Positions 2,884 to 47,432 of a stretch of 64,000 nt of DNA are shown piece by piece. The position numbers were made by a program, and so were the translations under genes. Every line of letters starts with the position of its first letter. Position 1 is the stretch's first letter. The notes beneath the pieces are model-generated. The model was not told the origin of the DNA. It saw only the letters and a list, made by a program, of their open reading frames with translations, and did not search any database. This DNA comes from Haliotis rufescens (taxonomy: Eukaryota), in NCBI RefSeq assembly GCF_023055435.1, contig NW_025963924.1:8680001-8744000 (forward strand), read 5' to 3'.

Positions 2884-5367
2884 ATGGCAAGTCTACAACC
2901 GTCACGGCTCATATTCAAATGTGTATGCTACATCCTACTGATAGCAATGGTTTATGGTCAGGGTTGTCCCCCTTGCAATTGTACCTACGACCATCATCAA
3001 GTATATGTGAACTGCTCCAACCAGAATCTTACAAGCGTTCCCAAGGGTTTACCAACATCAACCACAATGCTTTTTCTCAATGGAAACAACATAAAGACAA
3101 TAGGACCAAAAACATTTTCAACAATGAGAAATCTTCAATATCTATATATTGAGAGAAACTCTCTTGTTAGCCTACATGAACTGGCCTTTCATGGTCTTGA
3201 CAACCTTGTCAATCTGAGCTTAAAACTCAACGATCTAAAACTAAATTCAAAAACCTACAAAACCAATCTCTTCAAGCCACTACATAAACTTCAGGTTCTT
3301 AACATACAGTTCAATCAGATGACAACATGGCCTGGAGATGACAGTCAACGTATAGCCTACCCTGATGTTTCGTTTCAACATCTGTCTCGACTTACTCACC
3401 TTTACATCGATGGTCGTCCAACAGACTTTGGACCAGGATTTGCCAAACTTTTCAAACTGTCTCTTCTCGCCTTCACGCCATACACTAACTATTGCAAACT
3501 GACTTTACAAAACTCAACCTTTATAAACGTACCCCATGTGGAATATCTCTACATGACCTACTGCCAAATCAGAGATGCAGAACAATTAACATTTTCTCCC
3601 TTTTATCGTATCCATACACTTGACGTGTCACAAAATTGGGAATTGGGATTTCCTGAATTTGCTAAAGCAACGTATGGGCTCCGTGATTCCACCATACAAA
3701 TCCTGAAAATGAACCATATTTCTCCATTATCTGGATCTTGTTATCAACTGCGGAGAAACGATTTTGTTCATTTAAAGAATACCTCACTGCGGGAACTTCA
3801 CCTTTCTGGAAATGGATTCATTGACTTCGAAAAAGGAACCATTTTAAATTTTCCTGAAACTCTCAAGGTGTTGGTGGCCAGATGGAACCGGTTTTACGAA
3901 GGTCCATACATAGAGGAACTGACTCAGGTAAAGTCACTCCAATATCTGGATGTCTCACACCTAAAACTATTAAGACCGACATTTAGCTTTCATAGATATG
4001 ATCCTGTAAGTCATGTGTCGAACGGTGGATTTCCCTTTCCACCAAACCTTCAAGTCTTGAAACTTTCATTCTGTTGCATGGGTTTATACTTCCCCAACAC
4101 TGAAAAGGTGTTGAAAAACGATTTGAGAAGCATCTCTATAAATGGAAACTTGATATCTTTTGTTGGGGGTCCTGTTCGTGGTTTTGAAAAGGTCGAACAT
4201 TTTGATTTCTCTGACAATAAAATGGAGAGGCTCGATTCAAGTTTCTTTACTTTTAGCAATCGTGTGAAATATCTCAACCTTTCAAACAACTTTCTTGGAA
4301 ATATGATAGATAAAGATGACAAGGGTGATACTTTCAGTCAGCTGATTAAATTGACAGATTTGGATATGTCTCGAAACAGAATCAAATACTTACCAAAAGC
4401 TGTTTTTAAAAATCTTACAAATATACATTATCTCAGAATAAATAGCAACAGTATAAGAACAATTGATGCTCAAATCAAACACTTGTCGCATCTTAAATTA
4501 TTCGATGTAAGCCATAACAGCCTCCTCAAAATACCTGTAAACATTCTTCAAGAACTGGACACATTATCACATGTTTCTGTCCGTCTGAGAGGAAACCCAC
4601 TTACTTGCATATGCTCTTCCCTCGAATCCCTTCACTGGATGAACAGACTTGCCGATAACATTGAAGACATGGAATCAATTACGTGTCTTATGAAAAATGG
4701 GAAGATCAATTTTAGAAACCTAGATTCCATAATTACAAGTTTGGAAAAAGAATGCCATTCAAGTGTTCTTACCACTGTCATGACAATGTCTATTACCTTG
4801 ATAATAATGGTCGGAATAGGACTAGGAGCAGGATATCGGCATAGGTGGAAATTGAAATATCTGTACTATGTCGGGAGAAGAAAGTATCGGGAACTGGAGA
4901 ATACTGACCAAGATGACCAGGAGTACCAATATGATGCCTTTGTGTCATATGCAGACACAGACAGATGCTTAGTTATAGAGGGAATGATATCGGAACTGGA
5001 AGACAAAGCAGGACTTCGATTGTGCATTCATCATCGGGACTTTCTTCCAGGGGAGGTTATTGCTTCAAACATTGTCAACGCAATACAGAACAGCCGCAAG
5101 ACCTTGATTGTTTTATCTCCAGCTTTCCTGAAGAGTCACTGGTGTGATTTTGAGTACAACATGGCGCGGATGGAGGGCGTCTCCAGGAGACAGAACATCG
5201 TGCTGGTGGTGCTGTATGAGCCTGTCGACATGAAGGATCTACCTAAGGACATGGCAGTCATGTTGTCCACCAACTGTTACTTGGAGTACAACACAGATGT
5301 CTATGGCAGTGTTGTATTCTGGAACAGTTTACGTGAATCTATTACCACTGTAAATAAAATCGACTGA
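2884..5367 (+). CDS. Toll-like receptor, copy 1 (single cysteine cluster type, uninterrupted CDS)
   Basis: ATG at 2884 matches the paralog starts (the track's 2875 start is a GTG). Signal peptide, LRRNT CPPCNC..VNCS, many LxxLxLxxN repeats, LRRCT NPLTCIC..C..C, TM (VMTMSITLIIMVGIGLGAGY), TIR motifs YDAFVSY, LCIHHRDFLPG, WCDFE and FW. Confidence 0.96.
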   Translation: MASLQPSRLIFKCVCYILLIAMVYGQGCPPCNCTYDHHQVYVNCSNQNLTSVPKGLPTSTTMLFLNGNNIKTIGPKTFSTMRNLQYLYIERNSLVSLHELAFHGLDNLVNLSLKLNDLKLNSKTYKTNLFKPLHKLQVLNIQFNQMTTWPGDDSQRIAYPDVSFQHLSRLTHLYIDGRPTDFGPGFAKLFKLSLLAFTPYTNYCKLTLQNSTFINVPHVEYLYMTYCQIRDAEQLTFSPFYRIHTLDVSQNWELGFPEFAKATYGLRDSTIQILKMNHISPLSGSCYQLRRNDFVHLKNTSLRELHLSGNGFIDFEKGTILNFPETLKVLVARWNRFYEGPYIEELTQVKSLQYLDVSHLKLLRPTFSFHRYDPVSHVSNGGFPFPPNLQVLKLSFCCMGLYFPNTEKVLKNDLRSISINGNLISFVGGPVRGFEKVEHFDFSDNKMERLDSSFFTFSNRVKYLNLSNNFLGNMIDKDDKGDTFSQLIKLTDLDMSRNRIKYLPKAVFKNLTNIHYLRINSNSIRTIDAQIKHLSHLKLFDVSHNSLLKIPVNILQELDTLSHVSVRLRGNPLTCICSSLESLHWMNRLADNIEDMESITCLMKNGKINFRNLDSIITSLEKECHSSVLTTVMTMSITLIIMVGIGLGAGYRHRWKLKYLYYVGRRKYRELENTDQDDQEYQYDAFVSYADTDRCLVIEGMISELEDKAGLRLCIHHRDFLPGEVIASNIVNAIQNSRKTLIVLSPAFLKSHWCDFEYNMARMEGVSRRQNIVLVVLYEPVDMKDLPKDMAVMLSTNCYLEYNTDVYGSVVFWNSLRESITTVNKID

Positions 5368-11170: not shown

Positions 11171-13654
11171 ATGGCAAGTCTACAACCGTCACGGCTCATA
11201 TTCAAATTTGTATGCTACATCCTACTGATTGAAATGGTTTATGGTCAGGGTTGTCCCCCTTGTGATTGTACCTACGACCTTCATCAAGTATATGTGAACT
11301 GCTCCAACCGGAATCTTACAAGCGTTCCCAAGGGTTTACCAACATCAACCACAATGCTTTTTCTCAATGAAAACAACTTAAAGACAATAGGACCAAAAGC
11401 ATTTTCAACAATGAGAAATCTTCAATATCTATATCTTGAGAGAAACTCTCTTGTTAGCCTACATGAACTGGCCTTTCATGGTCTTGACAACCTCGTCAAT
11501 CTGAGCTTAAAACTCAACGATCTAAAACTAAATTCAAAAACCTACAAAACCAATCTCTTCAAGCCACTACATAAACTTCAGGTTCTTAACATACAGTTCA
11601 ATCAGATGACAACATGGCCTGGAGATGACAGTCAACGTATAGCCTACCCTGATGTTTCGTTTCAACATCTGTCTCAACTTACTCACCTTTACATCGATGG
11701 TCGTCCAACAGACTTTGGACCAGGATTTGCCAAACTTATCAAACTTTCTCTTCTCGCCTTCACGCCATACACTAACTATTGCAAATTGACTTTACAAAAC
11801 TCAACCTTTATAAACGTACCCCATGTGGAATATCTCTACATGACCGCCTGCCAAATCCGTGAGGTGGAATCCTTAACATTTTCTTCTTTTTATCGTATCC
11901 ATACAATTGACGTGTCACAAAATTGGGAATTGGGATTTCATGAATTTGGCAAGGCAACGTATGGACTCCGTGATTCCTCCATACAAATTCTGAAAATGAA
12001 CCATATTTCTCCATTATCTGGATCATGTTATCAACTGCGGAGAAACGATTTTGTTCATTTAAAGAATACCTCACTGCGGGAACTTCACATTTCTGACAAT
12101 GGACTCATTGACTTCGAAAAAGGAACCATGCTGAACTTACCTGAAACTCTAGAGATGCTGGTGGCCAGAAGGAATAGGTTTTACCTTGGTCCATACTTGT
12201 TAGAAATGTCTCAAGCAAAGTCACTCCGAATTCTGGATATCTCACACATGGAAATATTGGAGAGTACAGACGTCAGACAAGATAACCCTTCCAGTCGTGT
12301 GTCAGCACCCAGTAATTACCCTTTTCCACCAAACCTTCAAGTCTTGAAATTATCATTCTGTTGCCTGAAATATAGAATCTTTGGCGGTGATGTGATGAAA
12401 AACGATTTGAGAAGCATTTCCCTGAACGGTAATTTGTTTACTTCTGTAAGGGGACAGGTCTATGGTTTTGAAAACGTTGAACATTTTGATTTCTCTGACA
12501 ATATCTTGGAGTGGCTCGATTCAAGTTTCTTTGCTATTGACAATCGTGTGAAACATCTCAACCTTTCAAACAACTTTCTTGGAAATATGATAGATGAAGA
12601 TGACAAGGGTGATACTTTTAGTCAACTGGTTAACTTGACAGATTTGGATATATCTCAAAACAGAATCAATTACTTACCAAAGGCTGTTTTTAGAAATCTT
12701 ACAAATATACAATATCTCAGAATTAATAACAACAGTATAAGAACAATTGATGCTCAAATCAAACACTTGTCGCATCTTAAATTATTTGACGTAAGCCATA
12801 ATGGCCTCCTCAAAATGCCTGTAAACATTCTTCAAGAACTGGACACATTATCACATGTTTCTGTCCGCCTGAGAGGAAACCCACTTACCTGCATATGCTC
12901 TTCCCTCGAATCCCTTCGCTGGATGAACAGACTTGCTGATAACATCGAAGACATGGAATCAATGACGTGTCTTATGAAAAATGGGAAGATGAACAATTTG
13001 AGAAACCTAGATTCCATAATTATCAATTTGGATAAAGAATGCCGTTCAAGTGGTCTTACTACTGTCATGACAATGTCTATTCTCTTGATAATAATGGTCG
13101 GAATAGGATTAGGTGCAGGATATCGTCATAGGTGGAAATTGAAATATCTGTACTATGTCGGGAGAAGAAAGTATCGGGAACTGGAGAATACTGACCAAGA
13201 TGACCAGGAGTACCAATATGATGCCTTTGTGTCATATGCAGACACAGACAGATGCTTGGTTATAGAGGGAATGATATCGGAACTGGAAGACAAAGCTGGA
13301 CTTCGATTGTGCATTCATCATCGGGACTTTCTTCCAGGGGAGGTTATTGCTTCAAACATTGTCAACGCAATACAGAACAGCCGCAAGACCTTGATTGTTC
13401 TGTCTCCAGCTTTCCTGAAGAGTCACTGGTGTGATTTTGAGTACAACATGGCGCGGATGGAGGGCGTCTCCAGGAGACAGAACATCGTGCTGGTGGTGCT
13501 GTATGAGCCTGTTGACATGAAGGATCTACCTAAGGACATGGCAGTCATGTTGTCCACCAACTGTTACTTGGAGTACAACACAGATGTCTATGGCAGTGTT
13601 GTATTCTGGAACAGTTTACGTGAATCTATTACCACTGTTAACAAAGTCGACTAA
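11171..13654 (+). CDS. Toll-like receptor, copy 2
   Basis: 827 aa ORF with the same LRR-TM-TIR architecture; TIR essentially identical to copy 1. Confidence 0.96.
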   Translation: MASLQPSRLIFKFVCYILLIEMVYGQGCPPCDCTYDLHQVYVNCSNRNLTSVPKGLPTSTTMLFLNENNLKTIGPKAFSTMRNLQYLYLERNSLVSLHELAFHGLDNLVNLSLKLNDLKLNSKTYKTNLFKPLHKLQVLNIQFNQMTTWPGDDSQRIAYPDVSFQHLSQLTHLYIDGRPTDFGPGFAKLIKLSLLAFTPYTNYCKLTLQNSTFINVPHVEYLYMTACQIREVESLTFSSFYRIHTIDVSQNWELGFHEFGKATYGLRDSSIQILKMNHISPLSGSCYQLRRNDFVHLKNTSLRELHISDNGLIDFEKGTMLNLPETLEMLVARRNRFYLGPYLLEMSQAKSLRILDISHMEILESTDVRQDNPSSRVSAPSNYPFPPNLQVLKLSFCCLKYRIFGGDVMKNDLRSISLNGNLFTSVRGQVYGFENVEHFDFSDNILEWLDSSFFAIDNRVKHLNLSNNFLGNMIDEDDKGDTFSQLVNLTDLDISQNRINYLPKAVFRNLTNIQYLRINNNSIRTIDAQIKHLSHLKLFDVSHNGLLKMPVNILQELDTLSHVSVRLRGNPLTCICSSLESLRWMNRLADNIEDMESMTCLMKNGKMNNLRNLDSIIINLDKECRSSGLTTVMTMSILLIIMVGIGLGAGYRHRWKLKYLYYVGRRKYRELENTDQDDQEYQYDAFVSYADTDRCLVIEGMISELEDKAGLRLCIHHRDFLPGEVIASNIVNAIQNSRKTLIVLSPAFLKSHWCDFEYNMARMEGVSRRQNIVLVVLYEPVDMKDLPKDMAVMLSTNCYLEYNTDVYGSVVFWNSLRESITTVNKVD

Positions 13655-22434: not shown

Positions 22435-24888
22435 ATGGCAAGTCTACAACCGTCACGGCTCATATTCAAATGTGTATGCTACATCCTACTGATAGCAATG
22501 GTTTATGGTCAGGGTTGTCCCCCTTGCAATTGTACCTACGACCATCATCAAGTATATGTGAACTGCTCCAACCAGAATCTTACAAGCGTTCCCAAGGGTT
22601 TACCAACATCAACCACAATGCTTTTTCTCAATGGAAACAACATAAAGACAATAGGACCAAAAGCATTTTCAACAATGAGAAATCTTCAATATCTATATAT
22701 TGAGAGAAACTCTCTTGTTAGCCTACATGAACTGGCCTTTCATGGTCTTGACAACCTCGTCAATCTGAGCTTAAAACTCAACGATCTAAAACTAAATTCA
22801 AAAACCTACAAAACCAATCTCTTCAAGCCACTACATAAACTTCAGGTTCTTAACATACAGTTCAATCAGATGACAACATGGCCTGGAGATGACAGTCAAC
22901 GTATAGCCTACCCTGATGTTTCGTTTCAATATCTGTCTCAACTTACTCACCTTTACATCGATGGTCATCCAACAGACTTTGGACCAGGATTTGCCAAACT
23001 TATCAAACTTTCTCTTCTCGCCTTCACGCCATACACTAACTATTGCAAACTGACTTTACAAAACTCAACCTTTATAAACGTACCGAATGTGGAATATCTC
23101 TACATGACCTTCTGCCAAATCCGTGAGGTGGAATCCTTAACATTTTCTTCTTTTTATCGTATCCATACAATTGACGTGTCACAAAATTGGGAATTGGGAT
23201 TTCATGAATTTGGCAAGGCAACGTATGGACTCCGTGATTCCTCCATACAAATCCTGAAAATGAACCATATTTCTCCATTATCTGGATCATGTTATCAACT
23301 GCGGAGAAACGATTTTGTTCACTTAAAGAATACCTCACTGCGGGAACTTCACATTTCTGACAATGGACTCATTGACTTCGAAAAAGGAACCATGCTGAAC
23401 TTACCTGAAACTCTAGAGATGCTGGTGGCCAGAAGGAATAGGTTTTACCTTGGTCCATACTTGTCAGAAATGTCTCAAGCAAAGTCACTCCGAATTCTGG
23501 ATATCTCACACATGGAAATATTGGAGAACCCTTCCAGTCGTGTGACAGGGCCGAGTAAATACTTTTTTCCACCAAACCCTCAAGTCTTGAAATTATCATT
23601 CTGTTGCCTGAAATATAGAATCTTTGGCGGTGATGTGATGAAAAACGATTTGAGAAGCATTTCCCTGAACGGTAATTTGTTTACTTCTGTAAGGGGACAG
23701 GTCCATGGTTTTGAAAACGTTGAACATTTTGATTTCTCTGACAATATCTTGGAGTGGCTCGATTCAAGTTTCTTTGCTTTTGTGAAACATCTCAACCTTT
23801 CCAGAAACTTTCTTGGAAATATGATAGATGAAGATGACAAGGGTGATACTTTTAGTCAACTGGTTAACTTGACAGATTTGGATATATCTCAAAACAGAAT
23901 CAAATACTTACCAAAGGCTGTTTTTAGAAATCTTACAAATATACAGTATCTCAGAATAAATAGCAACAGTATAAGAACAATTGATGCTCAAATCAAACAC
24001 TTGTCGCATCTTAAATTATTTGACGTAAGCCATAATGGCCTCCTCAAAATGCCTGTAAACATTCTTCAAGAACTGGACACATTATCACATGTTTCTGTCC
24101 GTCTGAGAGGAAACCCACTTACCTGCATATGCTCTTCCCTCGAATCCCTTCTCTGGATGAACAGACTTGCTGATAACATCGAAGACATGGAATCAATGAC
24201 GTGTCTTATGAAAAATGGGGAGATGAACAATTTGAGAAACCTAGATTCCATAATTATCAATTTGGATAAAGAATGCCGTTCAAGTGGTCTTACTACTGTC
24301 ATGACAATGTCTATTCTCTTGACAATAATGGTCGGAATAGGATTAGGTGCAGGGTATCGACATAGGTGGAAACTGAAATACCTGTACTATGTCGGGAGAA
24401 GAAAGTATCGGGAACTGGAGAATACTGACCAAGATGACCAGGAGTACCAATATGATGCCTTTGTGTCATATGCAGACACAGACAGATGCTTAGTTATAGA
24501 GGGAATGATATCGGAACTGGAAGACAAAGCTGGACTTCGATTGTGCATTCATCATCGGGACTTTCTTCCAGGGGAGGTTATTGCTTCAAACATTGTCAAC
24601 GCAATACAGAACAGCCGCAAGACCTTGATTGTTCTGTCTCCAGCTTTCCTGAAGAGTCACTGGTGTGATTTTGAGTACAACATGGCGCGGATGGAGGGCG
24701 TCTCCAGGAGACAGAACATCGTGCTGGTGGTGCTGTATGAGCCTGTTGACATGAAGGATCTACCCAAGGACATGGCAGTCATGTTGTCCACCAACTGTTA
24801 CTTGGAGTACAACACAGATGTGTATGGCAGTGTTGTATTCTGGAACAGTTTACGTGAATCTATTACCACTGTTAACAAAGTCGACTGA
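22435..24888 (+). CDS. Toll-like receptor, copy 3 (two in-frame ectodomain deletions)
   Basis: 817 aa ORF, closest to copy 2 but lacking 7 aa (STDVRQD) and 3 aa near FAIDNRVK. Confidence 0.94.
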   Translation: MASLQPSRLIFKCVCYILLIAMVYGQGCPPCNCTYDHHQVYVNCSNQNLTSVPKGLPTSTTMLFLNGNNIKTIGPKAFSTMRNLQYLYIERNSLVSLHELAFHGLDNLVNLSLKLNDLKLNSKTYKTNLFKPLHKLQVLNIQFNQMTTWPGDDSQRIAYPDVSFQYLSQLTHLYIDGHPTDFGPGFAKLIKLSLLAFTPYTNYCKLTLQNSTFINVPNVEYLYMTFCQIREVESLTFSSFYRIHTIDVSQNWELGFHEFGKATYGLRDSSIQILKMNHISPLSGSCYQLRRNDFVHLKNTSLRELHISDNGLIDFEKGTMLNLPETLEMLVARRNRFYLGPYLSEMSQAKSLRILDISHMEILENPSSRVTGPSKYFFPPNPQVLKLSFCCLKYRIFGGDVMKNDLRSISLNGNLFTSVRGQVHGFENVEHFDFSDNILEWLDSSFFAFVKHLNLSRNFLGNMIDEDDKGDTFSQLVNLTDLDISQNRIKYLPKAVFRNLTNIQYLRINSNSIRTIDAQIKHLSHLKLFDVSHNGLLKMPVNILQELDTLSHVSVRLRGNPLTCICSSLESLLWMNRLADNIEDMESMTCLMKNGEMNNLRNLDSIIINLDKECRSSGLTTVMTMSILLTIMVGIGLGAGYRHRWKLKYLYYVGRRKYRELENTDQDDQEYQYDAFVSYADTDRCLVIEGMISELEDKAGLRLCIHHRDFLPGEVIASNIVNAIQNSRKTLIVLSPAFLKSHWCDFEYNMARMEGVSRRQNIVLVVLYEPVDMKDLPKDMAVMLSTNCYLEYNTDVYGSVVFWNSLRESITTVNKVD

Positions 24889-29342: not shown

Positions 29343-29485
29343 NNNNNNNNNNNNNNNNNNNNNNNNNNNNNNNNNNNNNNNNNNNNNNNNNNNNNNNNNN
29401 NNNNNNNNNNNNNNNNNNNNNNNNNNNNNNNNNNNNNNNNNNNNNNNNNNNNNNNNNNNNNNNNNNNNNNNNNNNNNNNNNNNNN
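29343..29485. other. Assembly gap
   Basis: Run of N. Confidence 1.
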
Positions 29486-32747: not shown

Positions 32748-35231
32748 ATGGCAAGTCTACAACCGTCACGGCTCATATTCAAATGTGTATGCTACATCCT
32801 ACTGATAGCAATGGTTTATGGTCAGGGTTGTCCCCCTTGCAATTGTACCTACGACCATCATCAAGTATATGTGAACTGCTCCAACCAGAATCTTACAAGC
32901 GTTCCCAAGGGTTTACCAACATCAACCACAATGCTATTTCTCAATGGAAACAACATAAAGACAATAGGACCAAAAGCATTTTCAACAATGAAAAATCTTC
33001 AATATCTATATATTGAGAGAAACTCTCTTGTTAGCCTACATGAACTGGCCTTTCATGGTCTTAACAACCTCGTCAATCTGAGCTTAAAACTCAACGACCT
33101 CAAACTAAATTCAAAAACCTACAAAACCAATCTCTTCAAGCCACTACATAAACTTCAGGTTCTTAACATACAGTTCAATCAGATGACAACATGGCCTGGA
33201 GATGACAGTCAACGTATAGCCTACCCTGATGCCTCGTTTCAACATCTGTCTCGACTTACTCACCTTTACATCGATGGTCGTCCAACAGACTTTGGACCAG
33301 GATTTGCCAAACTTTTCAAGCTTTCTCTTCTCGCCTTCACGCCATACACTAACTATTGCAAACTGACTTTACAAAACTCAACCTTTATAAACGTACCCAA
33401 TGTGGAATATCTCTACATGACCTACTGCCAAATCAGAGAAGCAGAACCATTAACATTTTCTCCTTTTTATCGTATCCATACACTTGACGTGTCACAAAAT
33501 TGGGAATTGGGATTTCCTGAATTTGCTAAAGCAACGTATGGGCTCCGTGATTCCTCCATACAAATCCTGAAAATGAACGGTATTTCTCCATTATCTGGAT
33601 CTTGTTATCAACTGCGGACAAACGATTTTGTTCACTTAAAGGATACCTCACTGCGAGAACTTCACATTTCTGGCAATGGACTCATTGACTTCGAAAAAGG
33701 AACCATTTTGAACTTACCTGAAACTCTAGAGATGCTGGTGGCCAGATGGAATAGGTTTTACCTTGGTCAATACTTGTTGGAAATGTCTCAAACAAAGTCA
33801 CTCCGAATTCTGGATATCTCACACATGAAAGCATTGAGGAGTACAGACGTCAGACAATATAACCCTTCCACTCATGTGTCAGTACCCAGTATTTTCCCTT
33901 TTCCACCAAACCTTCAAGTCTTGAAATTATCATTCTGTTGCCTGAAATTAAGCTTCATTGGTGGTGATCTGATGAAAAACGATTTGAGAAGCATTTCTCT
34001 GAATGGTAATTTGATTACTTCTGTAAGGGGACAGTCCCATGGTTTTGAAAACGTTGAATATTTTGATTTCTCGAACAATATCTTGGAGTGGCTCGATTCA
34101 AATTTCTATGGTATTGACAATCGTGTGAAATATCTCAACCTTTCCAAAAACTTTCTTGGAAATATGATAGATGAGGATGACAAGGGTAATTCTTTCAGTC
34201 AACTGGTTAACTTGACAGATTTGGATATATCTCAAAACAGAATCAAATACTTACCAAAGGCTATTTTTAGAAATCTTACAAATATACAATATCTCAGAAT
34301 TAATAACAACAGTATAAGAACTATTGATGCTCAAATCAAACACTTGTCGCATCTTAAATTATTTGACGTAAGCCATAATGGCCTCCTCAAAATGCCTGTA
34401 AACATTCTTCAAGAACTGGACACATTATCACAGGTTTCTGTCCGTCTGAGGGGAAACCCACTTACCTGCATATGCTCTTCCCTCGAATCCCTTCGCTGGA
34501 TGAACAGACTTGCTGATAACATCGAAGATATGGAATCAATTACGTGTCTTATGAAAAATGGGAAGATGAACAATTTGAGAAACCTAGATTCCATTATTAT
34601 CAATTTGGATAAAGGATGCCGTTCAAGTGGTCTTACTACTGTCATGACAATGTCTATTCTCTTGATAATAATGGTCGGAATAGGATTAGGAGCAGGGTAT
34701 CGTCATAGGTGGAAACTGAAATACCTGTACTATGTCGGGAGAAGAAAGTATCGGGAACTGGAGAATACTGACCAAGATGACCAGGAGTACCAATATGATG
34801 CCTTTGTGTCATATGCAGACACAGACAGATGCTTGGTTATAGAGGGAATGATATCGGAACTGGAAGACAAAGCTGGACTTCGATTGTGCATTCATCATCG
34901 GGACTTTCTTCCAGGGGAGGTTATTGCTTCAAACATTGTCAACGCAATACAGAACAGCCGCAAGACCTTGATTGTTCTGTCTCCAGCTTTCCTGAAGAGT
35001 CACTGGTGTGATTTTGAGTACAACATGGCGCGGATGGAGGGCGTCTCCAGGAGACAGAACATTGTGCTGGTGGTGCTGTATGAGCCTGTTGACATGAAGG
35101 ATCTACCCAAGGACATGGCAGTCATGTTGTCCACCAACTGTTACTTGGAGTACAACACAGATGTGTATGGCAGTGTTGTATTCTGGGACAGTTTATGTGA
35201 ATCTATTACCACTGTTAATAAAATCGACTGA
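32748..35231 (+). CDS. Toll-like receptor, copy 4
   Basis: 827 aa ORF, LRR-TM-TIR; C-terminus reads FWDSLCE instead of FWNSLRE. Confidence 0.96.
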   Translation: MASLQPSRLIFKCVCYILLIAMVYGQGCPPCNCTYDHHQVYVNCSNQNLTSVPKGLPTSTTMLFLNGNNIKTIGPKAFSTMKNLQYLYIERNSLVSLHELAFHGLNNLVNLSLKLNDLKLNSKTYKTNLFKPLHKLQVLNIQFNQMTTWPGDDSQRIAYPDASFQHLSRLTHLYIDGRPTDFGPGFAKLFKLSLLAFTPYTNYCKLTLQNSTFINVPNVEYLYMTYCQIREAEPLTFSPFYRIHTLDVSQNWELGFPEFAKATYGLRDSSIQILKMNGISPLSGSCYQLRTNDFVHLKDTSLRELHISGNGLIDFEKGTILNLPETLEMLVARWNRFYLGQYLLEMSQTKSLRILDISHMKALRSTDVRQYNPSTHVSVPSIFPFPPNLQVLKLSFCCLKLSFIGGDLMKNDLRSISLNGNLITSVRGQSHGFENVEYFDFSNNILEWLDSNFYGIDNRVKYLNLSKNFLGNMIDEDDKGNSFSQLVNLTDLDISQNRIKYLPKAIFRNLTNIQYLRINNNSIRTIDAQIKHLSHLKLFDVSHNGLLKMPVNILQELDTLSQVSVRLRGNPLTCICSSLESLRWMNRLADNIEDMESITCLMKNGKMNNLRNLDSIIINLDKGCRSSGLTTVMTMSILLIIMVGIGLGAGYRHRWKLKYLYYVGRRKYRELENTDQDDQEYQYDAFVSYADTDRCLVIEGMISELEDKAGLRLCIHHRDFLPGEVIASNIVNAIQNSRKTLIVLSPAFLKSHWCDFEYNMARMEGVSRRQNIVLVVLYEPVDMKDLPKDMAVMLSTNCYLEYNTDVYGSVVFWDSLCESITTVNKID

Positions 35232-36977: not shown

Positions 36978-37125
36978 NNNNNNNNNNNNNNNNNNNNNNN
37001 NNNNNNNNNNNNNNNNNNNNNNNNNNNNNNNNNNNNNNNNNNNNNNNNNNNNNNNNNNNNNNNNNNNNNNNNNNNNNNNNNNNNNNNNNNNNNNNNNNNN
37101 NNNNNNNNNNNNNNNNNNNNNNNNN
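36978..37125. other. Assembly gap
   Basis: Run of N. Confidence 1.
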
Positions 37126-38701: not shown

Positions 38702-41700
38702 TTAAGTTTCTCTTAGCCGTTGGACTTTATATAGATATAAACATGTGTTATATACAACATCAAAGTTTTCTGATGAAATAATTTCAGTAAAAGATGTTAC
38801 AGTTTGAAACTTGATATACTGTTTAAGATACATATTTCTTAGGGCTGAATAACGCTCACATACAAGTAAAACATGAAATTCATCTTCAATAAAAGGTATA
38901 CCATTGTCTATACAATATTTACATAAGCGTTCAGTGTATGGGACATTTGTGTATCTCCCCAAGTCAATTGCAAGTTTAAACTTGCTACATCTGAAACGAG
39001 TCATACATATTCTCAGATGTACTGGTATGGGGAGTGTAAGATATTTTTCTACATTCAACAGGGATTTAAAATGTTTATAATAAAAAGTATCAGATATACT
39101 ATTGATAGAACTACACCATGATTGTTGAAGGTTATCAAATAATCTTTGCTTAAAAAGATGAATAAATACCTTCACATTGCCAACATCTTGTGTTAACCAT
39201 ACATATCCAAAACCTAATTTAAACAAAATATTCTTAATGTGAGTAGCCCATGTGGTGCGACCAGAATGGTCCAGTGATTTGAGCATTAAATAACATTGGC
39301 GAGGCAGTCTGCGCTCGTCCAAACGCAGTAGCCTGCACCAATACTTGATGGCCCTTGTGGTATACACAAGTTGGAGAGGGGCTCTTCCGCACTCTCCTAA
39401 AACCATTGCATTGTTTGTTGTTTTACCTGTATTTAGAAACCATTTACACATTTTGTTCTGTACATCTTCAATAATTTTACAATATGAGATGCCCCATATT
39501 TCTGCGCCGTAACAGACAATAGGCACAATCATAGCATCAAATATCTTAAATAAATCTTGACAGGGTATATTACCAACTTTCTTTTGATATCTATATAATG
39601 TCATAATGGCCTTGTTACTCTGTGCAGCAAGAGTATTTAGTGCCTTAGTCCAAACAAGTTTGGGCGTGAACACAATACCCAAATATCTATAAAACGACAC
39701 GGTTTCAATATATACACTATTAAATTTCCATTTTTCATAATGTCTAAGGGGTCCACCATTTCTGAATACCATAACTTTGGTTTTCTTCAAGTTTACCTTC
39801 ATGCCTGTGGTATTGCAAAAATGTTCCAAGGCATTGATCTTCTTTTGTAAATTTAATGGTTCATCAGCAATAGATGACACGTCATCAGCAAACATAAGTG
39901 CATATATTGCTGGGCAGTCTTTAGTAATAAAGACAGTTTGTCCTCCATAATTTTCCATAAAATTTACAAGTTTATTTATGAATATTAAAAACATCTGAGG
40001 GCTGAGGATGCATCCTTGACGGGTACCTATATTACACTTAAAGTATTTGGATAACCCAGTAGGTGTTCTAACACAGGCACACAGTTTATTGTACATTGAT
40101 GTAATAATAGACAGAAACTTTCCGCAGACACCAATATCAGCCAAACTCTGTAACAACATATTGTGATCAACATTATCAAAAGCTTTTGAGAAATCTACAA
40201 ATAAGCAGTAGAACCTTCCTTTCTTTTTACATGCATACTTTTGGATAATGGCCTGTAGTGAAAATATATGATCTGTCGTGGAATAGTTGGGTCTAAATCC
40301 AGCTTGAGATTCGTCAATGATATTGTTATCATCACACCACCTCTGTAGTCTAGCATTAAGAATAGATGTAAATACTTTGCATATGGTATCAATGAGTGAT
40401 ATACCTCTATAATTGTTGGCATCATTCATATCACCAGACTTGAACAGAGGACAGATGATACTTTTCCCCCACACATCTGGAAAGTTACCACTCTCAAAGA
40501 TTTTGTTAAATGTAACAACTAAAATTGGTGTAATTTGTTTCTCTGAAGACTTTAAAAATTCAGCAGCAATACCATCAGGCCCAGGGGATTTATTATTCCC
40601 AAGCTGTTTTATTTGACTTGATATTTCTTCTGCTAGAATAGGAATGTTAATTGTTAGATCATTATTGTCAGGGATATGGTACATACTGCTATCAAGTGCA
40701 AGATCCTGTCTAAAAAGAAGAGACATAAAATGGTTAGTCCATTGCTCAGTATTAATTGATTGAGTGACTGCATTAAATGGTTTACTATCCTTGAGCAGTT
40801 TCCAGAACAACTTTGGGTTGTCTCTTGCAGCTATCAGTTTTTCTCTCTGTGCTTCAAGAAATGAGTTTTTCTTTCTACTAAAAGCATTTTTAAACACTGA
40901 TCTTAAGTGTCTAAAAAGTGAAAAATCTTCCCCATGATCTCTGTGAGCTCTCAGGGCTTTGTATTTGTCATGTTTAATTAATTCAAGTTCATCATCCCAC
41001 CAGGGAGGCTGCTGATTTCTCCTGAAGTTAGAATTTAAACCATATACTTTTTTGGTGTGTTCTGCAGCTTCTTGATAATAACTGACTAAACAAGATACTG
41101 CTGTATTACAATTATTATTAGCTAGTTGTAAAATATAATCATAATGCTCTACTAATATACCCTCAAGCTTGTGCAAGAAGGTTTCTTTAGCACCTTCATT
41201 CCACACATATTTCTCCCAACTGCCTCCACCTTCCTTTTCCAGATTACAGTTGGAGTTACTCCTTGTATTACCTGGGGCTGGGGGTTGACTATATTTACCA
41301 GATGAGGTACCCTGAATATTGAGTGAGCAATATAAGGGGAAGTGATTGGAGTGATCCTGTGTACCAACCCCAAAGTTAGAGAAATATGGAAAGAGAGAAG
41401 AGGAGGCAATCATGTAATCCACAGCACTTGATCCATTATGAGTGAAACATGTGAATTCACCATTTGTATCATTAAACAATCTCCCATTCAATGTGTGAAT
41501 ACCAAAGGTCCTACACAATTCAACAAGTCTTTTGCCAAAATTATTATGTGTCACTGAGTCTCTGTTTTTTCTTGGCATATCAAATGTATCAGAGGGATAA
41601 TCATCAACATCTCTCTGAATAAAGTCAATATTGTCATCCGGGATATAGTCAAGGAAGTCCTTTGTCCTTGCATTAAGATCACCAGCAAGAAATATATGCT

Positions 41701-42172
41701 TGTGTGGGTGTTCCCCAACAATAATGTTCAAGTAGTTTTCAAGATGAGTAAATCCATCACTATCTATATTCTCATTAACTGGTGAATTTTCGGGTGAGAT
41801 ATAAGTAAATATCAAAACACAGTCAGAGTCCCATGATAAACTTGATGTTTTGAATAAAAGTACAACAGTATTTTCAAAATTATCATAAAGCCTACATAAC
41901 AGTCCACTATCTAGCCAATGAGAGCGTATCAAAACAGTGATACCACCACTATATAGCCCGAACGTGTGTGTCTTGGGACGGACACAGTTTAGCGCACGAA
42001 AACCTGACAAGAAGTCCGAGAATTCATCGGACCGTCTCACAAATGACTCACAAAACGCGATCAAGTCAAAATGTTCACAAAGACTTTTTACCTGAGATGT
42101 CGAGTTTTCATATTTTCGCAGTCCTTCTATATTCCACGAGAGAATATCAAATGTTGGGCCGTGGCCGTCACA
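38702..42172 (-). CDS. LINE ORF2: APE endonuclease, reverse transcriptase and C-terminal zinc-binding motif
   Basis: The frame stays open up to 42172 (CDGHGPTFDILSWNIEGL...). EN motifs SWNIEGL, GDLNAR, VDY, DHSNH. RT motifs KSPGPDGI, YRGISL, QAGFR, FVDFSKAFD, GTRQGCILSP, FADD, YLG. C-terminal CKYC..EDEFH..C. Confidence 0.93.
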   Translation of the reverse strand, partial: CDGHGPTFDILSWNIEGLRKYENSTSQVKSLCEHFDLIAFCESFVRRSDEFSDFLSGFRALNCVRPKTHTFGLYSGGITVLIRSHWLDSGLLCRLYDNFENTVVLLFKTSSLSWDSDCVLIFTYISPENSPVNENIDSDGFTHLENYLNIIVGEHPHKHIFLAGDLNARTKDFLDYIPDDNIDFIQRDVDDYPSDTFDMPRKNRDSVTHNNFGKRLVELCRTFGIHTLNGRLFNDTNGEFTCFTHNGSSAVDYMIASSSLFPYFSNFGVGTQDHSNHFPLYCSLNIQGTSSGKYSQPPAPGNTRSNSNCNLEKEGGGSWEKYVWNEGAKETFLHKLEGILVEHYDYILQLANNNCNTAVSCLVSYYQEAAEHTKKVYGLNSNFRRNQQPPWWDDELELIKHDKYKALRAHRDHGEDFSLFRHLRSVFKNAFSRKKNSFLEAQREKLIAARDNPKLFWKLLKDSKPFNAVTQSINTEQWTNHFMSLLFRQDLALDSSMYHIPDNNDLTINIPILAEEISSQIKQLGNNKSPGPDGIAAEFLKSSEKQITPILVVTFNKIFESGNFPDVWGKSIICPLFKSGDMNDANNYRGISLIDTICKVFTSILNARLQRWCDDNNIIDESQAGFRPNYSTTDHIFSLQAIIQKYACKKKGRFYCLFVDFSKAFDNVDHNMLLQSLADIGVCGKFLSIITSMYNKLCACVRTPTGLSKYFKCNIGTRQGCILSPQMFLIFINKLVNFMENYGGQTVFITKDCPAIYALMFADDVSSIADEPLNLQKKINALEHFCNTTGMKVNLKKTKVMVFRNGGPLRHYEKWKFNSVYIETVSFYRYLGIVFTPKLVWTKALNTLAAQSNKAIMTLYRYQKKVGNIPCQDLFKIFDAMIVPIVCYGAEIWGISYCKIIEDVQNKMCKWFLNTGKTTNNAMVLGECGRAPLQLVYTTRAIKYWCRLLRLDERRLPRQCYLMLKSLDHSGRTTWATHIKNILFKLGFGYVWLTQDVGNVKVFIHLFKQRLFDNLQQSWCSSINSISDTFYYKHFKSLLNVEKYLTLPIPVHLRICMTRFRCSKFKLAIDLGRYTNVPYTERLCKYCIDNGIPFIEDEFHVLLVCERYSALRNMYLKQYIKFQTVTSFTEIISSENFDVVYNTCLYLYKVQRLRET

Positions 42173-42813
42173 TCACTTACCAAAATTGTCAACATTGGGA
42201 GTTAACTCCCCTGAAGGAGGTGTGTCTCGGTTTGTGTTGCTTCCGGGTCCAAACAAATCACTCCATGAACGATCGCGAAAAGAGGGCCTTGCATCACGAT
42301 GCGTACCCCCACCTGTAGACACCTTCTTCACACACTTGTCTTGTCGGTCGTACATATATACCTGCCCTTCCACAATAAGCTTGTTAACACGTATCTTAGG
42401 TCGTTTCCCGCTGTCTCTGGCTTCTTGAAAGTAGGTAGACAGTGCGCGTCTATCCTCTCGTATTTTCTGTGGGAAATCCTCTGTTACACGTGATCGGTGA
42501 TTTCTATCTTGTTGTTCCCGTCCTCTCTTGAAAATATCACTCTTGTCTTTTGTCAGTAGGAATTTAGCTATGATAGGAGAATCACTTTTGCCAGGGTTGA
42601 GGCGGTGAGCACGAATAATAACAATATCATTTGCCTTCTCCATGTGTAACTCGTCGCGCAGAAACTCTCTCACGTTTGACTCGGACTGATCCCATGTTTC
42701 GCCCCTCTCTCCAGATATTCCATGGAATATTAAGTTGTTTCGCCGCTCACGACACTCTTGATCCTCGAGTTTTTCTTCCAAACTAGACAGAGAAAGTCTC
42801 AGTTGTGTATTTT
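42173..42813 (-). CDS. LINE ORF1, C-terminal part (coiled coil plus L1-ORF1/Tnp22-like region), 5'-truncated
   Basis: Motifs LEEKLEDQECRERRNNLIFHGI, IIRAHRL, PIIAKFL, VTEDFP..RE.RR.L. The track's first ~13 codons come from host flank. Confidence 0.85.
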
Positions 42814-44948: not shown

Positions 44949-47432
44949 ATGGCAAGTCTACAACCGTCACGGCTCATATTCAAATGTGTATGCTACATCC
45001 TACTGATAGCAATCGTTTATGGTCAGGGTTGTCCCCCTTGCAATTGTACCTACGACCATCATCAAGTATATGTGAACTGCTCCAACCGGAATCTTACAAG
45101 CGTTCCCAAGGGTTTACCAACATCAACCACAATGCTATTTCTCAATGGAAACAACATAAAGACAATAGGACCAAAAGCATTTTCAACAATGAGAAATCTT
45201 CAATATCTATATATTGAGAGAAACTCTCTTGTTAGCCTACATGAATTGGCCTTTCATGGTCTTGACAACCTCGTCAATCTGAGCTTAAAACTCAACGACC
45301 TCAAACTAAATTCAAAAACCTACAAAACCAATCTCTTCAAGCCACTACATAAACTTCAGGTTCTTAACATACAGTTCAATCAGATGACAACATGGCCTGG
45401 AGATGACAGTCAACGTATAGCCTACCCTGATGCCTCGTTTCAACATCTGTCTCGACTTACTCACCTTTACATCGATGGTCGTCCAACAGACTTTGGACCA
45501 GGATTTGCCAAACTTTTCAAGCTTTCTCTTCTCGCCTTCACGCCATACACTAACTATTGCAAACTGACTTTACAAAACTCAACCTTTATAAACGTACCCA
45601 ATGTGGAATATCTCTACATGACCTACTGCCAAATCAGAGAAGCAGAACCATTAACATTTTCTCCTTTTTATCGTATCCATACACTTGACGTGTCACAAAA
45701 TTGGGAATTGGGATTTCCTGAATTTGCTAAAGCAACGTATGGGCTCCGTGATTCCTCCATACAAATCCTGAAAATGAACGGTATTTCTCCATTATCTGGA
45801 TCTTGTTATCAACTGCGGAGAAACGATTTTGTTCACTTAAAGAATACCTCACTGCGGGAACTTCACATTTCTGGCAATGGACTCATTGACTTCGAAAAAG
45901 GAACCATTTTGAACTTACCTGAAACTCTACAGATGCTGGTGGCCAGATGGAATAGGTTTTACCTTGGTCAATACTTGTTGGAAATGTCTCAAGGAAAGTC
46001 ACTCCGAATTCTGGATATCTCACACATGAAAGGATTGGCGAGTAGAGACGTCAGACAAGATAACCCTTCCACTCATGTGTCAGTACCCAGTATGTTCCCT
46101 TTTCCACCAAACCTTCAAGTCTTAAAATTATCATTCTGTAGCCTGAAATTAAGCCTCACTGGTGATTATCTGATGAAAAACGATTTGAGAAGCATTACTC
46201 TGAATGGTAATTTGATTGATTGTGTTATGGGACAGACTCATGGTTTTGAAAACGTTGAACATTTTGATTTCTCAAACAATATCTTGGAGTGGCACGATTC
46301 AAGTTTCTATGGTATTGACAATCGTGTGAAATATCTCAACCTTTCCAGAAACTTTCTTGGAAATATGATAGATGAAGATGACAAGGGTAATACTTTCAGT
46401 CAACTGGTTAACTTGACAGATTTGGATATATCTCAAAACAGAATCAAATACTTACCAAAGGCTATTTTTAGAAATCTTACAAATATACAATATCTCAGAA
46501 TTAATAACAACAGTATAAGAACAATTGATGCTCAAATCAAACACTTGTCGCATCTTAAATTATTTGACGTAAGCCATAATGGCCTCCTCAAAATGCCTGT
46601 AAACATTCTTCAAGAACTGGACACATTATCACATGTTTCTGTCCGTCTGAGAGGAAACCCACTTACCTGCATATGCTCTTCCCTCGAATCCCTTCGCTGG
46701 ATGAACAGACTTGCTGATAACATCGAAGACATGGAATCAATTACGTGTATAATGAAAAATGGGAAGATCAACAATTTGAAAAACCTAGATTCCATAATTA
46801 TCAATTTGGATAAAGAATGCCGTTCAAGTGGTCTTACTACTGTCATGACAATGTCTATTCTCTTGATAATAATGGTCGGAATAGGATTAGGAGCAGGGTA
46901 TCGTCATAGGTGGAAACTGAAATACCTGTACTATGTCGGGAGAAGAAAGTATCGGGAACTGGAGAATACTGACCAAGATGACCAGGAGTACCAATATGAT
47001 GCCTTTGTGTCATATGCAGACACAGACAGATGCTTGGTTATAGAGGGAATGATATCGGAACTGGAAGACAAAGCTGGACTTCGATTGTGCATTCATCATC
47101 GGGACTTTCTTCCAGGGGAGGTTATTGCTTCAAACATTGTCAACGCAATACAGAACAGCCGCAAAACCTTGATTGTTTTGTCTCCCGCTTTCCTGAAGAG
47201 TCACTGGTGTGATTTTGAGTACAACATGGCGCGGATGGAGGGTGTCTCCAGGAGACAGAACATCGTGCTGGTGGTGCTGTATGAGCCTGTTGACATGAAG
47301 GATCTACCCAAGGACATGGCAGTCATGTTGTCCACCAACTGTTACTTGGAGTACAACACAGATGTGTATGGCAGTGTTGTATTCTGGAACAGTTTACGTG
47401 AATCTATTACCACTGTTAATAAAATCGACTGA
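44949..47432 (+). CDS. Toll-like receptor, copy 5
   Basis: 827 aa ORF, LRR-TM-TIR; closest to copy 4. Confidence 0.96.
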   Translation: MASLQPSRLIFKCVCYILLIAIVYGQGCPPCNCTYDHHQVYVNCSNRNLTSVPKGLPTSTTMLFLNGNNIKTIGPKAFSTMRNLQYLYIERNSLVSLHELAFHGLDNLVNLSLKLNDLKLNSKTYKTNLFKPLHKLQVLNIQFNQMTTWPGDDSQRIAYPDASFQHLSRLTHLYIDGRPTDFGPGFAKLFKLSLLAFTPYTNYCKLTLQNSTFINVPNVEYLYMTYCQIREAEPLTFSPFYRIHTLDVSQNWELGFPEFAKATYGLRDSSIQILKMNGISPLSGSCYQLRRNDFVHLKNTSLRELHISGNGLIDFEKGTILNLPETLQMLVARWNRFYLGQYLLEMSQGKSLRILDISHMKGLASRDVRQDNPSTHVSVPSMFPFPPNLQVLKLSFCSLKLSLTGDYLMKNDLRSITLNGNLIDCVMGQTHGFENVEHFDFSNNILEWHDSSFYGIDNRVKYLNLSRNFLGNMIDEDDKGNTFSQLVNLTDLDISQNRIKYLPKAIFRNLTNIQYLRINNNSIRTIDAQIKHLSHLKLFDVSHNGLLKMPVNILQELDTLSHVSVRLRGNPLTCICSSLESLRWMNRLADNIEDMESITCIMKNGKINNLKNLDSIIINLDKECRSSGLTTVMTMSILLIIMVGIGLGAGYRHRWKLKYLYYVGRRKYRELENTDQDDQEYQYDAFVSYADTDRCLVIEGMISELEDKAGLRLCIHHRDFLPGEVIASNIVNAIQNSRKTLIVLSPAFLKSHWCDFEYNMARMEGVSRRQNIVLVVLYEPVDMKDLPKDMAVMLSTNCYLEYNTDVYGSVVFWNSLRESITTVNKID

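What the first reader, a model, noticed from the sequence alone, without database searches (positions are those of the whole stretch)
3060..4450. Substitutions recur at position 8 of LxxLxLxxN in nine different LRRs
Seen, copies 1/2/3/4/5: LFLN[G/E/G/G/G]N, LYMT[Y/A/F/Y/Y]C, LKMN[H/H/H/G/G]I, LHxS[G/D/D/G/G]N, LVAR[W/R/R/W/W]N, FDFS[D/D/D/N/N]N, LNLS[N/N/R/K/R]N, LDxS[R/Q/Q/Q/Q]N, LRIN[S/N/S/N/N]N. Several are radical or multi-nucleotide codon changes (TAC/GCC/TTC, CAT/GGT). Known: this residue follows the concave beta strand, is solvent exposed and stacks between adjacent repeats. Inference: one continuous stripe on the solenoid acts as a specificity code for ligand or dimer contacts.
Basis: partly seen in the sequence, partly recalled or inferred. 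Interest (0 to 1): 0.8.

Follow-up and report, generated by a model that had tools for sequence, protein, structure and literature searches.

The report
Fast-changing edge residue in abalone TLRs
Five neighbouring abalone Toll-like receptor genes differ unusually often at one fixed spot (position 8) of their leucine-rich repeats. The excess is real and recurs in other receptor groups of the genome, but it fits a weakly constrained site as well as a "specificity code", so this is an ordinary example of a known kind of immune-gene diversification.

Summary
The window holds five tandem intronless TLR genes (c1-c5, 817-827 aa) of an abalone (Haliotis). All nine listed position-8 differences and the multi-nucleotide codon changes are present.

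- **Discovery set:** position 8 of LxxLxLxxN varies in 9 of 20 LRRs, against 8 of 80 for positions 2, 3, 5 and 7 (Fisher P=0.0008). Because position 8 was chosen after looking, the family-wise P is only 0.07-0.14.
- **Replication:** in 11 other recent TLR paralogue groups of the same genome (159 LRRs), position 8 varies 33 times against 20 expected (P=0.0017).
- **Selection:** omega at position 8 is 1.4-2.8 here, not significantly above 1 (LRT P=0.15). It is far above the other exposed conserved-segment positions (0.2) and the TIR domain (0.08). In the other groups it is 0.75 against 0.42.
- **Other tests:** replacements at position 8 are no more radical than elsewhere, and there is no excess among proteins of other Haliotis species.
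- **Geometry:** the variable residues form two short runs (LRR9-11, LRR15-18) plus two singletons, not one continuous stripe.

The enrichment is real, but a "specificity code" is unproven. Near-neutral drift at the least constrained conserved-segment residue explains it equally well. This is a new member of a known kind, of modest interest.

The parts
2884..5367 (+). TLR gene c1 (827 aa): signal peptide, LRRNT, 20 LRRs, LRRCT, TM, TIR. It has a divergent central block.
   Evidence: ORF. Pfam LRR_8, LRRNT and TIR. AF2 model. Foldseek to TLR5/8/13/3/4.
11171..13654 (+). TLR gene c2 (827 aa)
   Evidence: 88% aa identity to c1.
22435..24888 (+). TLR gene c3 (817 aa; two in-frame deletions, in the LRR12 loop and the LRR15 variable segment)
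32748..35231 (+). TLR gene c4 (827 aa)
44949..47432 (+). TLR gene c5 (827 aa)
3061..4596 (+). c1 LRR1-LRR20. The conserved segments start at nt 3061, 3133, 3205, 3289, 3391, 3457, 3538, 3610, 3694, 3787, 3862, 3937, 4048, 4123, 4192, 4264, 4351, 4423, 4492 and 4570.
   Evidence: Register; coordinates; strands at positions 3-5.
3082..3084 (+). LRR1 position 8: G/E/G/G/G (GGA/GAA). Codon starts in c2-c5: 11369, 22633, 32946, 45147.
   Evidence: E is private to c2.
3559..3561 (+). LRR7 position 8: Y/A/F/Y/Y (TAC/GCC/TTC). c2-c5: 11846, 23110, 33423, 45624.
   Evidence: A and F are not seen in other Haliotis species.
3715..3717 (+). LRR9 position 8: H/H/H/G/G (CAT/GGT). c2-c5: 12002, 23266, 33579, 45780.
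   Evidence: G is also in H. cracherodii P0002.
3808..3810 (+). LRR10 position 8: G/D/D/G/G (GGA/GAC/GGC). c2-c5: 12095, 23359, 33672, 45873.
3883..3885 (+). LRR11 position 8: W/R/R/W/W (TGG/AGG). c2-c5: 12170, 23434, 33747, 45948.
4213..4215 (+). LRR15 position 8: D/D/D/N/N (GAC/AAC). c2-c5: 12497, 23740, 34074, 46275.
4285..4287 (+). LRR16 position 8: N/N/R/K/R (AAC/AGA/AAA). c2-c5: 12569, 23803, 34146, 46347.
4372..4374 (+). LRR17 position 8: R/Q/Q/Q/Q (CGA/CAA). c2-c5: 12656, 23890, 34233, 46434.
4444..4446 (+). LRR18 position 8: S/N/S/N/N (AGC/AAC). With N it reads N-N-S, a possible N-glycosylation sequon. c2-c5: 12728, 23962, 34305, 46506.
   Evidence: The sequon is read directly from the sequence.
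4930..5349 (+). c1 TIR domain. It is nearly identical in protein among the five copies, but synonymous differences remain.
   Evidence: Pfam TIR at residues 683-782. TM+TIR dS 0.04-0.14 with dN/dS 0.02-0.22. ML omega 0.076.

Best explanation
The window carries five tandemly duplicated, intact, single-exon Toll-like receptor genes of an abalone. Each has a single cysteine cluster: LRRNT, 20 LRRs, LRRCT, TM and TIR. After duplication, and with patchy gene conversion between copies, selection differed sharply along the protein. The TIR domain stayed under strong purifying selection. The beta-sheet face of the LRR solenoid (conserved-segment positions 2, 3, 5 and 7) was also kept. Amino-acid replacements accumulated in the convex and loop segments and, within the conserved segment, almost only at position 8.

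Position 8 is the outward-pointing residue at the start of the ascending loop, just before the asparagine-ladder residue. It evolves at about the neutral rate or somewhat faster, because it has no packing role in about 14 of the 20 repeats. The result is a genuine position-specific excess that lies along the concave/ascending edge of the solenoid, and it recurs in most other TLR paralogue groups of this genome.

Shown: the genes, the register, the excess, its replication and the omega contrast. Inferred: solvent exposure, and that weak constraint rather than adaptation is the main cause. These residues may contribute to ligand or partner specificity, but that is not demonstrated.
For: - **Gene structure and family:**
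- **Excess:** 9/20 against 8/80, P=0.0008; stratified P=0.008.
- **Replication:** 159 independent LRRs of 11 other groups give 33 against 20.1 expected, P=0.0017, and P=0.007 against positions 2, 3, 5 and 7.
- **Pairwise (Nei-Gojobori) rates:** pN at position 8 is 0.144 against a whole-LRR pS of 0.103. pN at positions 2, 3, 5 and 7 is 0.019. The pN ratio is 7.7 (CI 3.9-25).
- **ML omega:** position 8 = 2.78, positions 2, 3, 5, 7 = 0.21, core = 0.44, variable segment = 0.77, TM+TIR = 0.076. At position 8, omega=0.2 is rejected (2dlnL=19) and omega=0.5 is rejected (2dlnL=6.9), but omega=1 is not (2dlnL=2.1).
- **No local mutation hotspot:** pS at position-8 codons is 0.078, which is not elevated.
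- **Other groups:** omega at position 8 is 0.75 (0.50-1.03) against 0.42. Position 8 there is as variable as the convex-side x positions (P=0.21).
- **Replacement type:** not more radical than elsewhere.
- **Fixed position-8 residues:** six repeats keep F, G, P, G, H, G in all ten Haliotis proteins.
Against: - The point estimates of omega at position 8 in this family (1.4-2.8) exceed 1.
- Five of the 11 other groups also have pN at position 8 above pS, which hints at some positive selection.
- Eight of the 81 residue states private to this species sit at position 8, which makes up 3.9% of the columns. That looks like a burst after duplication.
- Pure neutrality at position 8 would also predict a visible excess between species, and none is seen (8 against 6.9 expected). 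Saturation and the fixed subset of repeats may explain this.
Confidence: 0.58

Rival explanations
1. Adaptive specificity stripe. Position-8 residues along the concave/ascending edge contact ligand or a dimer partner. After each duplication, positive selection changed them to give the paralogues different specificities, while the beta-sheet face kept a common function.
For: - Omega point estimates are above 1 (1.39; 2.78), and significantly above the other conserved-segment positions and above 0.5.
- There are multi-nucleotide and three-state codons.
- There are derived charge changes in c2/c3 (G>E, G>D, W>R) that are private to this species.
- The excess recurs in several other groups, with pN at position 8 above pS in L006, L043, L050 and L054.
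- In solved vertebrate TLRs the ascending lateral surface, not the descending one, makes the ligand and protein contacts (PMC4598782).
- In sea-urchin TLRs positively selected sites cluster on and just beyond the beta-strands (PMC3367398).
Against: - Omega>1 is not significant (LRT P~0.15; bootstrap P(omega<=1)=0.16).
- The pooled other groups give omega 0.75.
- Replacements are not more radical than elsewhere.
- There is no excess among orthologues of other species.
- Only 9 of 20 repeats vary, in two runs plus singletons.
- The number of double hits is about what the neutral rate predicts (my estimate from pS).
- No ligand, binding or expression data exist.
Confidence: 0.3
2. Chance or post-hoc selection. 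With about 22 LRR positions to choose from and only five related, mosaic sequences, some position will look enriched.
For: The family-wise P is 0.14 over 22 positions and 0.07 over 9 positions in the discovery set. Many patterns are shared splits (c2c3 against c1c4c5, or c4c5 against the rest) inherited in blocks.
Against: The a-priori replication in 11 independent groups gives P=0.0017, with FWER 0.03. The likelihood contrast against the other conserved-segment positions is 2dlnL=19.
Confidence: 0.07
3. Mutational or gene-conversion artefact. On this reading a local mutation bias raises change at these codons, or short conversion tracts from other TLR genes do so.
For: Five of the nine differences are G<->A at the second codon base. 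The copies are clearly mosaic.
Against: Synonymous divergence at position-8 codons is not raised (pS 0.078 against 0.103). The nearest other TLR genes in the genome are only 43% identical, so no donor is available. Conversion would move whole tracts, not single codons 72 nt apart.
Confidence: 0.05

Closest known systems
Sea-urchin TLR multigene subfamilies (Buckley & Rast 2012, PMC3367398)
   Same: Both are tandem, intronless TLR paralogues with a single cysteine cluster. In both, the ectodomain is far more diverse than the TIR. Variable or selected sites are spatially clustered in the first ~10 residues of the LRRs, in two groups of repeats (e.g. LRR1-11 and LRR14-21).
   Different: In subfamily Ia most selected sites are in the beta-strands, and only 'a few' lie just beyond. 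Here the strand positions are conserved (omega 0.2) and the excess sits at the single residue beyond the strand. Only five genes are available here, and omega>1 is not significant.
Mollusc (bivalve) lineage-specific TLR expansions (Saco et al. 2023, PMC10279657)
   Same: Both show species-specific tandem duplications within one subfamily. Both show stronger negative selection on TIR and higher variability with episodic positive selection on the extracellular LRR region.
   Different: That work reports no LRR-position-resolved pattern in the passages found by term search. This case is a gastropod (Haliotis) cluster, with a position-8 focus and gene-conversion mosaicism.
Ascending lateral surface of vertebrate TLR ectodomains (Enkhbayar/Matsushima 2015, PMC4598782)
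   Same: Conserved-segment positions 3-5 form the strand, and the ascending loop starts right after it. That side mediates ligand and protein contacts in TLR1/2, TLR3, TLR8 and TLR9. Position 8 lies on the concave/ascending edge.
   Different: No complex, ligand or dimer is known for the abalone proteins. Sequence identity to solved TLRs is about 18%.
Hypervariable solvent-exposed xxLxLxx residues of plant R proteins/RLPs and of lamprey VLRs (my own knowledge, not checked here)
   Same: Diversity is concentrated on non-framework residues of the LRR conserved segment in recently duplicated or assembled immune receptors.
   Different: There several x positions on the sheet (2, 3, 5, 7, 8) are hypervariable with clear omega>1. 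Here only position 8 varies, and positive selection is unproven.

Membership tests
Toll-like receptor (single cysteine cluster / V-type) | Extracellular tandem LRRs capped by LRRNT and a single LRRCT | tested here: met
   Pfam LRR_8 (4.6e-33), LRR_4 and LRRNT. 20 conserved LRR segments were annotated. An NPxxCxC cap follows LRR20. The AF2 solenoid has strands at positions 3-5.
Toll-like receptor (single cysteine cluster / V-type) | Single transmembrane helix followed by a cytoplasmic TIR domain | tested here: met
   Pfam TIR 2.1e-17 and TIR_2 3.7e-15. The model has a long helix at 610-652 and an alpha/beta TIR fold at 683-821.
Toll-like receptor (single cysteine cluster / V-type) | Overall fold like solved TLR ectodomains | tested here: met
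   The Foldseek top hits are all TLRs (TLR5, TLR8, TLR13, TLR3, TLR4, TLR1/2), with E 1e-15 to 1e-21.
Toll-like receptor (single cysteine cluster / V-type) | Signals through TIR adaptors on ligand-induced dimerisation | not testable with these tools
   Only indirect evidence is available: TIR omega is 0.076, which implies a maintained function.
Diversifying-selection LRR immune receptors (plant R / VLR / sea-urchin TLR type) | Replacement changes concentrated on exposed non-framework residues of the LRR conserved segment | tested here: inconclusive
   Met for position 8 only (9/20). Positions 2, 3, 5 and 7 are conserved (8/80).
Diversifying-selection LRR immune receptors (plant R / VLR / sea-urchin TLR type) | dN/dS significantly above 1 at those residues | tested here: inconclusive
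   Omega is 1.39 (0.66-2.29) by Nei-Gojobori counting with bootstrap. ML gives 2.78, with LRT against 1 at 2dlnL=2.1. Other groups give 0.75.
Diversifying-selection LRR immune receptors (plant R / VLR / sea-urchin TLR type) | Variable residues form a contiguous exposed surface in 3D | not testable with these tools
   Model coordinates are not exported. From the register, the variable residues form runs at LRR9-11 and LRR15-18 plus LRR1 and LRR7, interrupted by invariant residues.

The most novel reading that the evidence does not exclude
In abalone TLR subfamilies, functional diversification after tandem duplication is channelled onto a one-residue-wide line at the concave/ascending edge (position 8), while the beta-sheet face is held constant. 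Different subfamilies of the same genome use different surfaces. Position 8 dominates in most groups, and sheet positions 5/7 or 2/5 dominate in the C1 and C35 groups. On this reading a handful of edge residues would set ligand or heterodimer specificity and could be swapped to reprogramme a receptor.
Probability: 0.25. Interest if true: 0.55.

Novelty: new member of a known kind. Interest (0 to 1): 0.3.

Why it matters
If the position-8 residues do set specificity, nine codons would give a compact, testable handle on how expanded invertebrate TLR families partition ligands. No ligand is known for almost any of these receptors. As it stands, the result is a quantified example of where constraint is weakest in the LRR conserved segment of recently duplicated TLRs. 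It also shows that a striking positional pattern can arise without demonstrable positive selection.

Tried and rejected
I stopped typing sequence and used numeric column coordinates found with a generic motif pattern instead.
No DNA of the H. cracherodii, H. rubra or H. asinina relatives could be fetched, so only protein-level comparison across species was possible.
3. Reads. Contigs of four runs were laid on c1 (3001 letters). They gave 32 'other letters', and 31 of these equal the base of another paralogue. They therefore reflect cross-mapping or assembly mixing of paralogues. No clean allele or expression evidence follows. Two small runs guessed to be RNA cover parts of the ORF from nt 2891 and nothing upstream, which is only a weak hint of transcription.
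4. Radical against conservative replacement at position 8 showed no difference.
5. Two further whole-genome searches with divergent TLR queries returned essentially the same ~55-60 genes. One earlier call had wrong coordinates.
6. The ML test of omega>1 was not significant.
7. Solvent accessibility and 3D contiguity could not be computed, because the predicted model is not available as coordinates.
8. The two N runs (29343-29485 and 36978-37125) were left untouched.
Full report
**What is there.** The window holds five long ORFs on the + strand: c1 2884-5367, c2 11171-13654, c3 22435-24888, c4 32748-35231 and c5 44949-47432. A non-LTR retrotransposon ORF lies between c4 and c5 on the - strand and carries endonuclease and RT domains. 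Each TLR ORF encodes an N-terminal hydrophobic helix, LRRNT, LRRs, an NPxxCxC cap, one transmembrane helix and a TIR domain. Pfam gives LRR_8 at 4.6e-33, LRRNT, and TIR at 2e-17. The AlphaFold2 model has mean pLDDT 83, and its Foldseek neighbours are all TLRs.

The genome is 1.33 Gb and contains some 55-60 full-length relatives. Only these five genes form this subfamily, because the next relative is 43% identical. Named relatives are 'toll-like receptor 4' of Haliotis cracherodii (87-94%), H. rubra (76-77%) and H. asinina (75-76%). The organism is therefore an abalone. Other notes of this scan call it red abalone, which I did not verify.

**Observation.** I aligned the five proteins and fixed the LRR register with a generic motif scan. 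This gives 20 conserved segments (LxxLxLxxN). A separate scoring and dynamic-programming annotator returns the same 20 starts. The modelled beta-strands fall on positions 3-5 of each repeat, as expected for LRRs (PMC4598782). The quoted codons (TAC/GCC/TTC, CAT/GGT) are correct. The coordinates 3060-4450 are exactly LRR1 to LRR18 of c1.

**Is it more than chance?**
- Variable repeats per conserved-segment position 1 to 9 are 2, 3, 4, 1, 1, 5, 0, 9 and 2.
- Position 8 varies in 9/20 repeats, against 127/571 ectodomain columns overall.
- The binomial P is 0.019. A permutation that keeps the number of variable sites within each repeat gives P=0.008. Fisher against positions 2, 3, 5 and 7 (8/80) gives P=0.0008.
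- Because the position was picked after looking, the family-wise P is 0.07 over 9 positions and 0.14 over 22 positions.

I therefore treated position 8 as an a-priori hypothesis and tested it on independent data. I took 11 other groups of recent TLR paralogues (73-99% identical) from the same genome, using only confidently scored conserved segments (159 LRRs). Position 8 is variable 33 times against 20.1 expected (P=0.0017, family-wise 0.03). Against positions 2, 3, 5 and 7 it is 33/159 against 80/636 (P=0.007). There it is the most variable conserved-segment position, and about as variable as the convex-side x positions (P=0.21).

The excess is not universal. Two groups show more change on the strand positions instead: L018-20 on contig C1 and L027 and others on C35.

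**Selection.**
- *Whole domains.* TM+TIR has dS of 0.04-0.14, so it is not simply homogenised, with dN/dS of 0.02-0.22. The ectodomain has dN/dS of 0.5-0.77.
- *By class in this family, Nei-Gojobori counts.* pN at position 8 is 0.144, and pN at positions 2, 3, 5 and 7 is 0.019. Whole-LRR pS is 0.103, and pS at position-8 codons is 0.078, so there is no mutation hotspot. This gives omega at position 8 of 1.39 (bootstrap CI 0.66-2.29) against 0.18, and a pN ratio of 7.7 (3.9-25).
- *ML, GY94 with fixed topology.* Omega is 2.78 at position 8, 0.21 at positions 2, 3, 5 and 7, 0.44 for the core, 0.77 for the variable segment and 0.076 for TM+TIR. For position 8, omega=0.2 and omega=0.5 are rejected (2dlnL 19.1 and 6.9), but omega=1 is not (2dlnL 2.1).
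- *Other groups.* In the 11 other groups omega at position 8 is 0.75 (0.50-1.03) against 0.42.
- *Replacement type.* Position-8 replacements are no more radical than other LRR replacements.

**Other species.** Ten Haliotis proteins align without register shifts. c1 has a 94%-identical counterpart in H. cracherodii (P0025), and c2-c5 cluster with another (P0002). Two receptor types therefore predate that split, and the c2-c5 type multiplied here, or is collapsed or unannotated there.
- Seven of the nine variable position-8 sites carry states not seen in the other species (E, A/F, D, R, N, R, R). Position 8 holds 8 of 81 such private states, against 3.9% of columns.
- Among the five proteins of the other species, position 8 is not enriched (8 against 6.9 expected, P=0.38).
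- With all ten proteins it varies in 14/20 repeats (P=0.004).
- Six repeats keep F, G, P, G, H, G throughout.

**Geometry.** Position 8 follows the strand by three residues and precedes the ladder asparagine, so it starts the ascending loop (PMC4598782). The nine variable residues form two runs (LRR9-11 and LRR15-18) and two singletons. They are separated by invariant, partly hydrophobic residues, and by the irregular LRR12 with a low-confidence loop. That equal positions line up is a property of any solenoid. Exposure and distances could not be measured, because coordinates are not exported.

**History of the copies.** Divergence is strongly mosaic. c1 differs from all the others by about 30% of nucleotides across residues 310-430. 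It is almost identical to c3/c4/c5 in the first 200 residues, and to c4/c5 again at residues 200-275. All copies are nearly identical over the TIR at protein level. This agrees with the scan's own notes on chimeric copies and on gene-conversion patches in other abalone TLR loci. Stratifying by repeat protects the position test from this heterogeneity. In the most divergent block (LRR12-14), position 8 is invariant.

**Reads.** Contigs of four public runs were laid on c1. Their differences are almost all (31/32) the bases of other paralogues, so they carry no clean allelic or expression information.

**Comparison with what is known.**
- Tandem, lineage-specific TLR expansions with diverse ectodomains and conserved TIRs are established for sea urchins (PMC3367398) and molluscs (PMC10279657).
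- In sea-urchin subfamily Ia the selected sites lie mainly in the strands, with a few just beyond (PMC3367398). Here the emphasis is reversed.
- In solved vertebrate TLRs the ascending lateral surface is the interaction side (PMC4598782). A functional role for position 8 is therefore plausible but untested.

**Verdict.** The 'specificity code' is possible, but it is not required by the data. Position 8 behaves as the least constrained residue of the conserved segment, evolving at or somewhat above the neutral rate. It sits next to a conserved sheet face and a strongly conserved TIR. This is a new, quantified member of a known kind.

**Limitations.** The discovery set is only five mosaic sequences. 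No model coordinates were available.

Noticed in passing
window 38702-42064 (-), with 42173-42853 (-): An intact 1120-aa non-LTR retrotransposon ORF (endonuclease plus reverse transcriptase, Pfam RVT_1 8.9e-34) lies between TLR copies c4 and c5. A 226-aa ORF lies just upstream of it on the same strand.
   Followed up: partly
window c1 3810-4170 against c2-c5 (protein residues ~310-430): c1 differs from all other copies by about 30% of nucleotides in LRR10-14 but by 0-5 per 150 nt in the N-terminal 200 residues and the TIR. An H. cracherodii protein (P0025) shares c1's divergent block. Two old receptor types therefore seem to be homogenised at both ends by gene conversion.
   Followed up: partly
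window 22435-24888 (c3): c3 carries two in-frame deletions relative to the others: 8 residues in the LRR12 loop and 3 residues in the LRR15 variable segment. It also has L>P in the PPNLQ motif before LRR13. The ORF is still intact.
   Followed up: no
L018, L019, L020 (G000:C1:16.17-16.26 Mb): The longest ORFs of these TLR genes (921-1090 aa) start with a long low-complexity N-terminal run rich in repeated R-D-A-S-like units ahead of the LRRs. This group also shows the opposite variability pattern, with strand positions 5 and 7 most variable.
   Followed up: no
window 3260-3842 (run X16 contig): One assembled contig from a run guessed to be RNA is c4-like throughout, but it carries the c2/c3 codon (GAC, Asp) at LRR10 position 8. 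It is either an unsampled mosaic allele or an assembly chimera of paralogues.
   Followed up: partly
window 4444-4452 and homologous places in c2-c5: The S/N difference at LRR18 position 8 creates (N-N-S) or removes a potential N-glycosylation sequon.
   Followed up: no
window 29343-29485 and 36978-37125: Two runs of N (143 and 148 bases) lie in the intergenic spacers.
   Followed up: no
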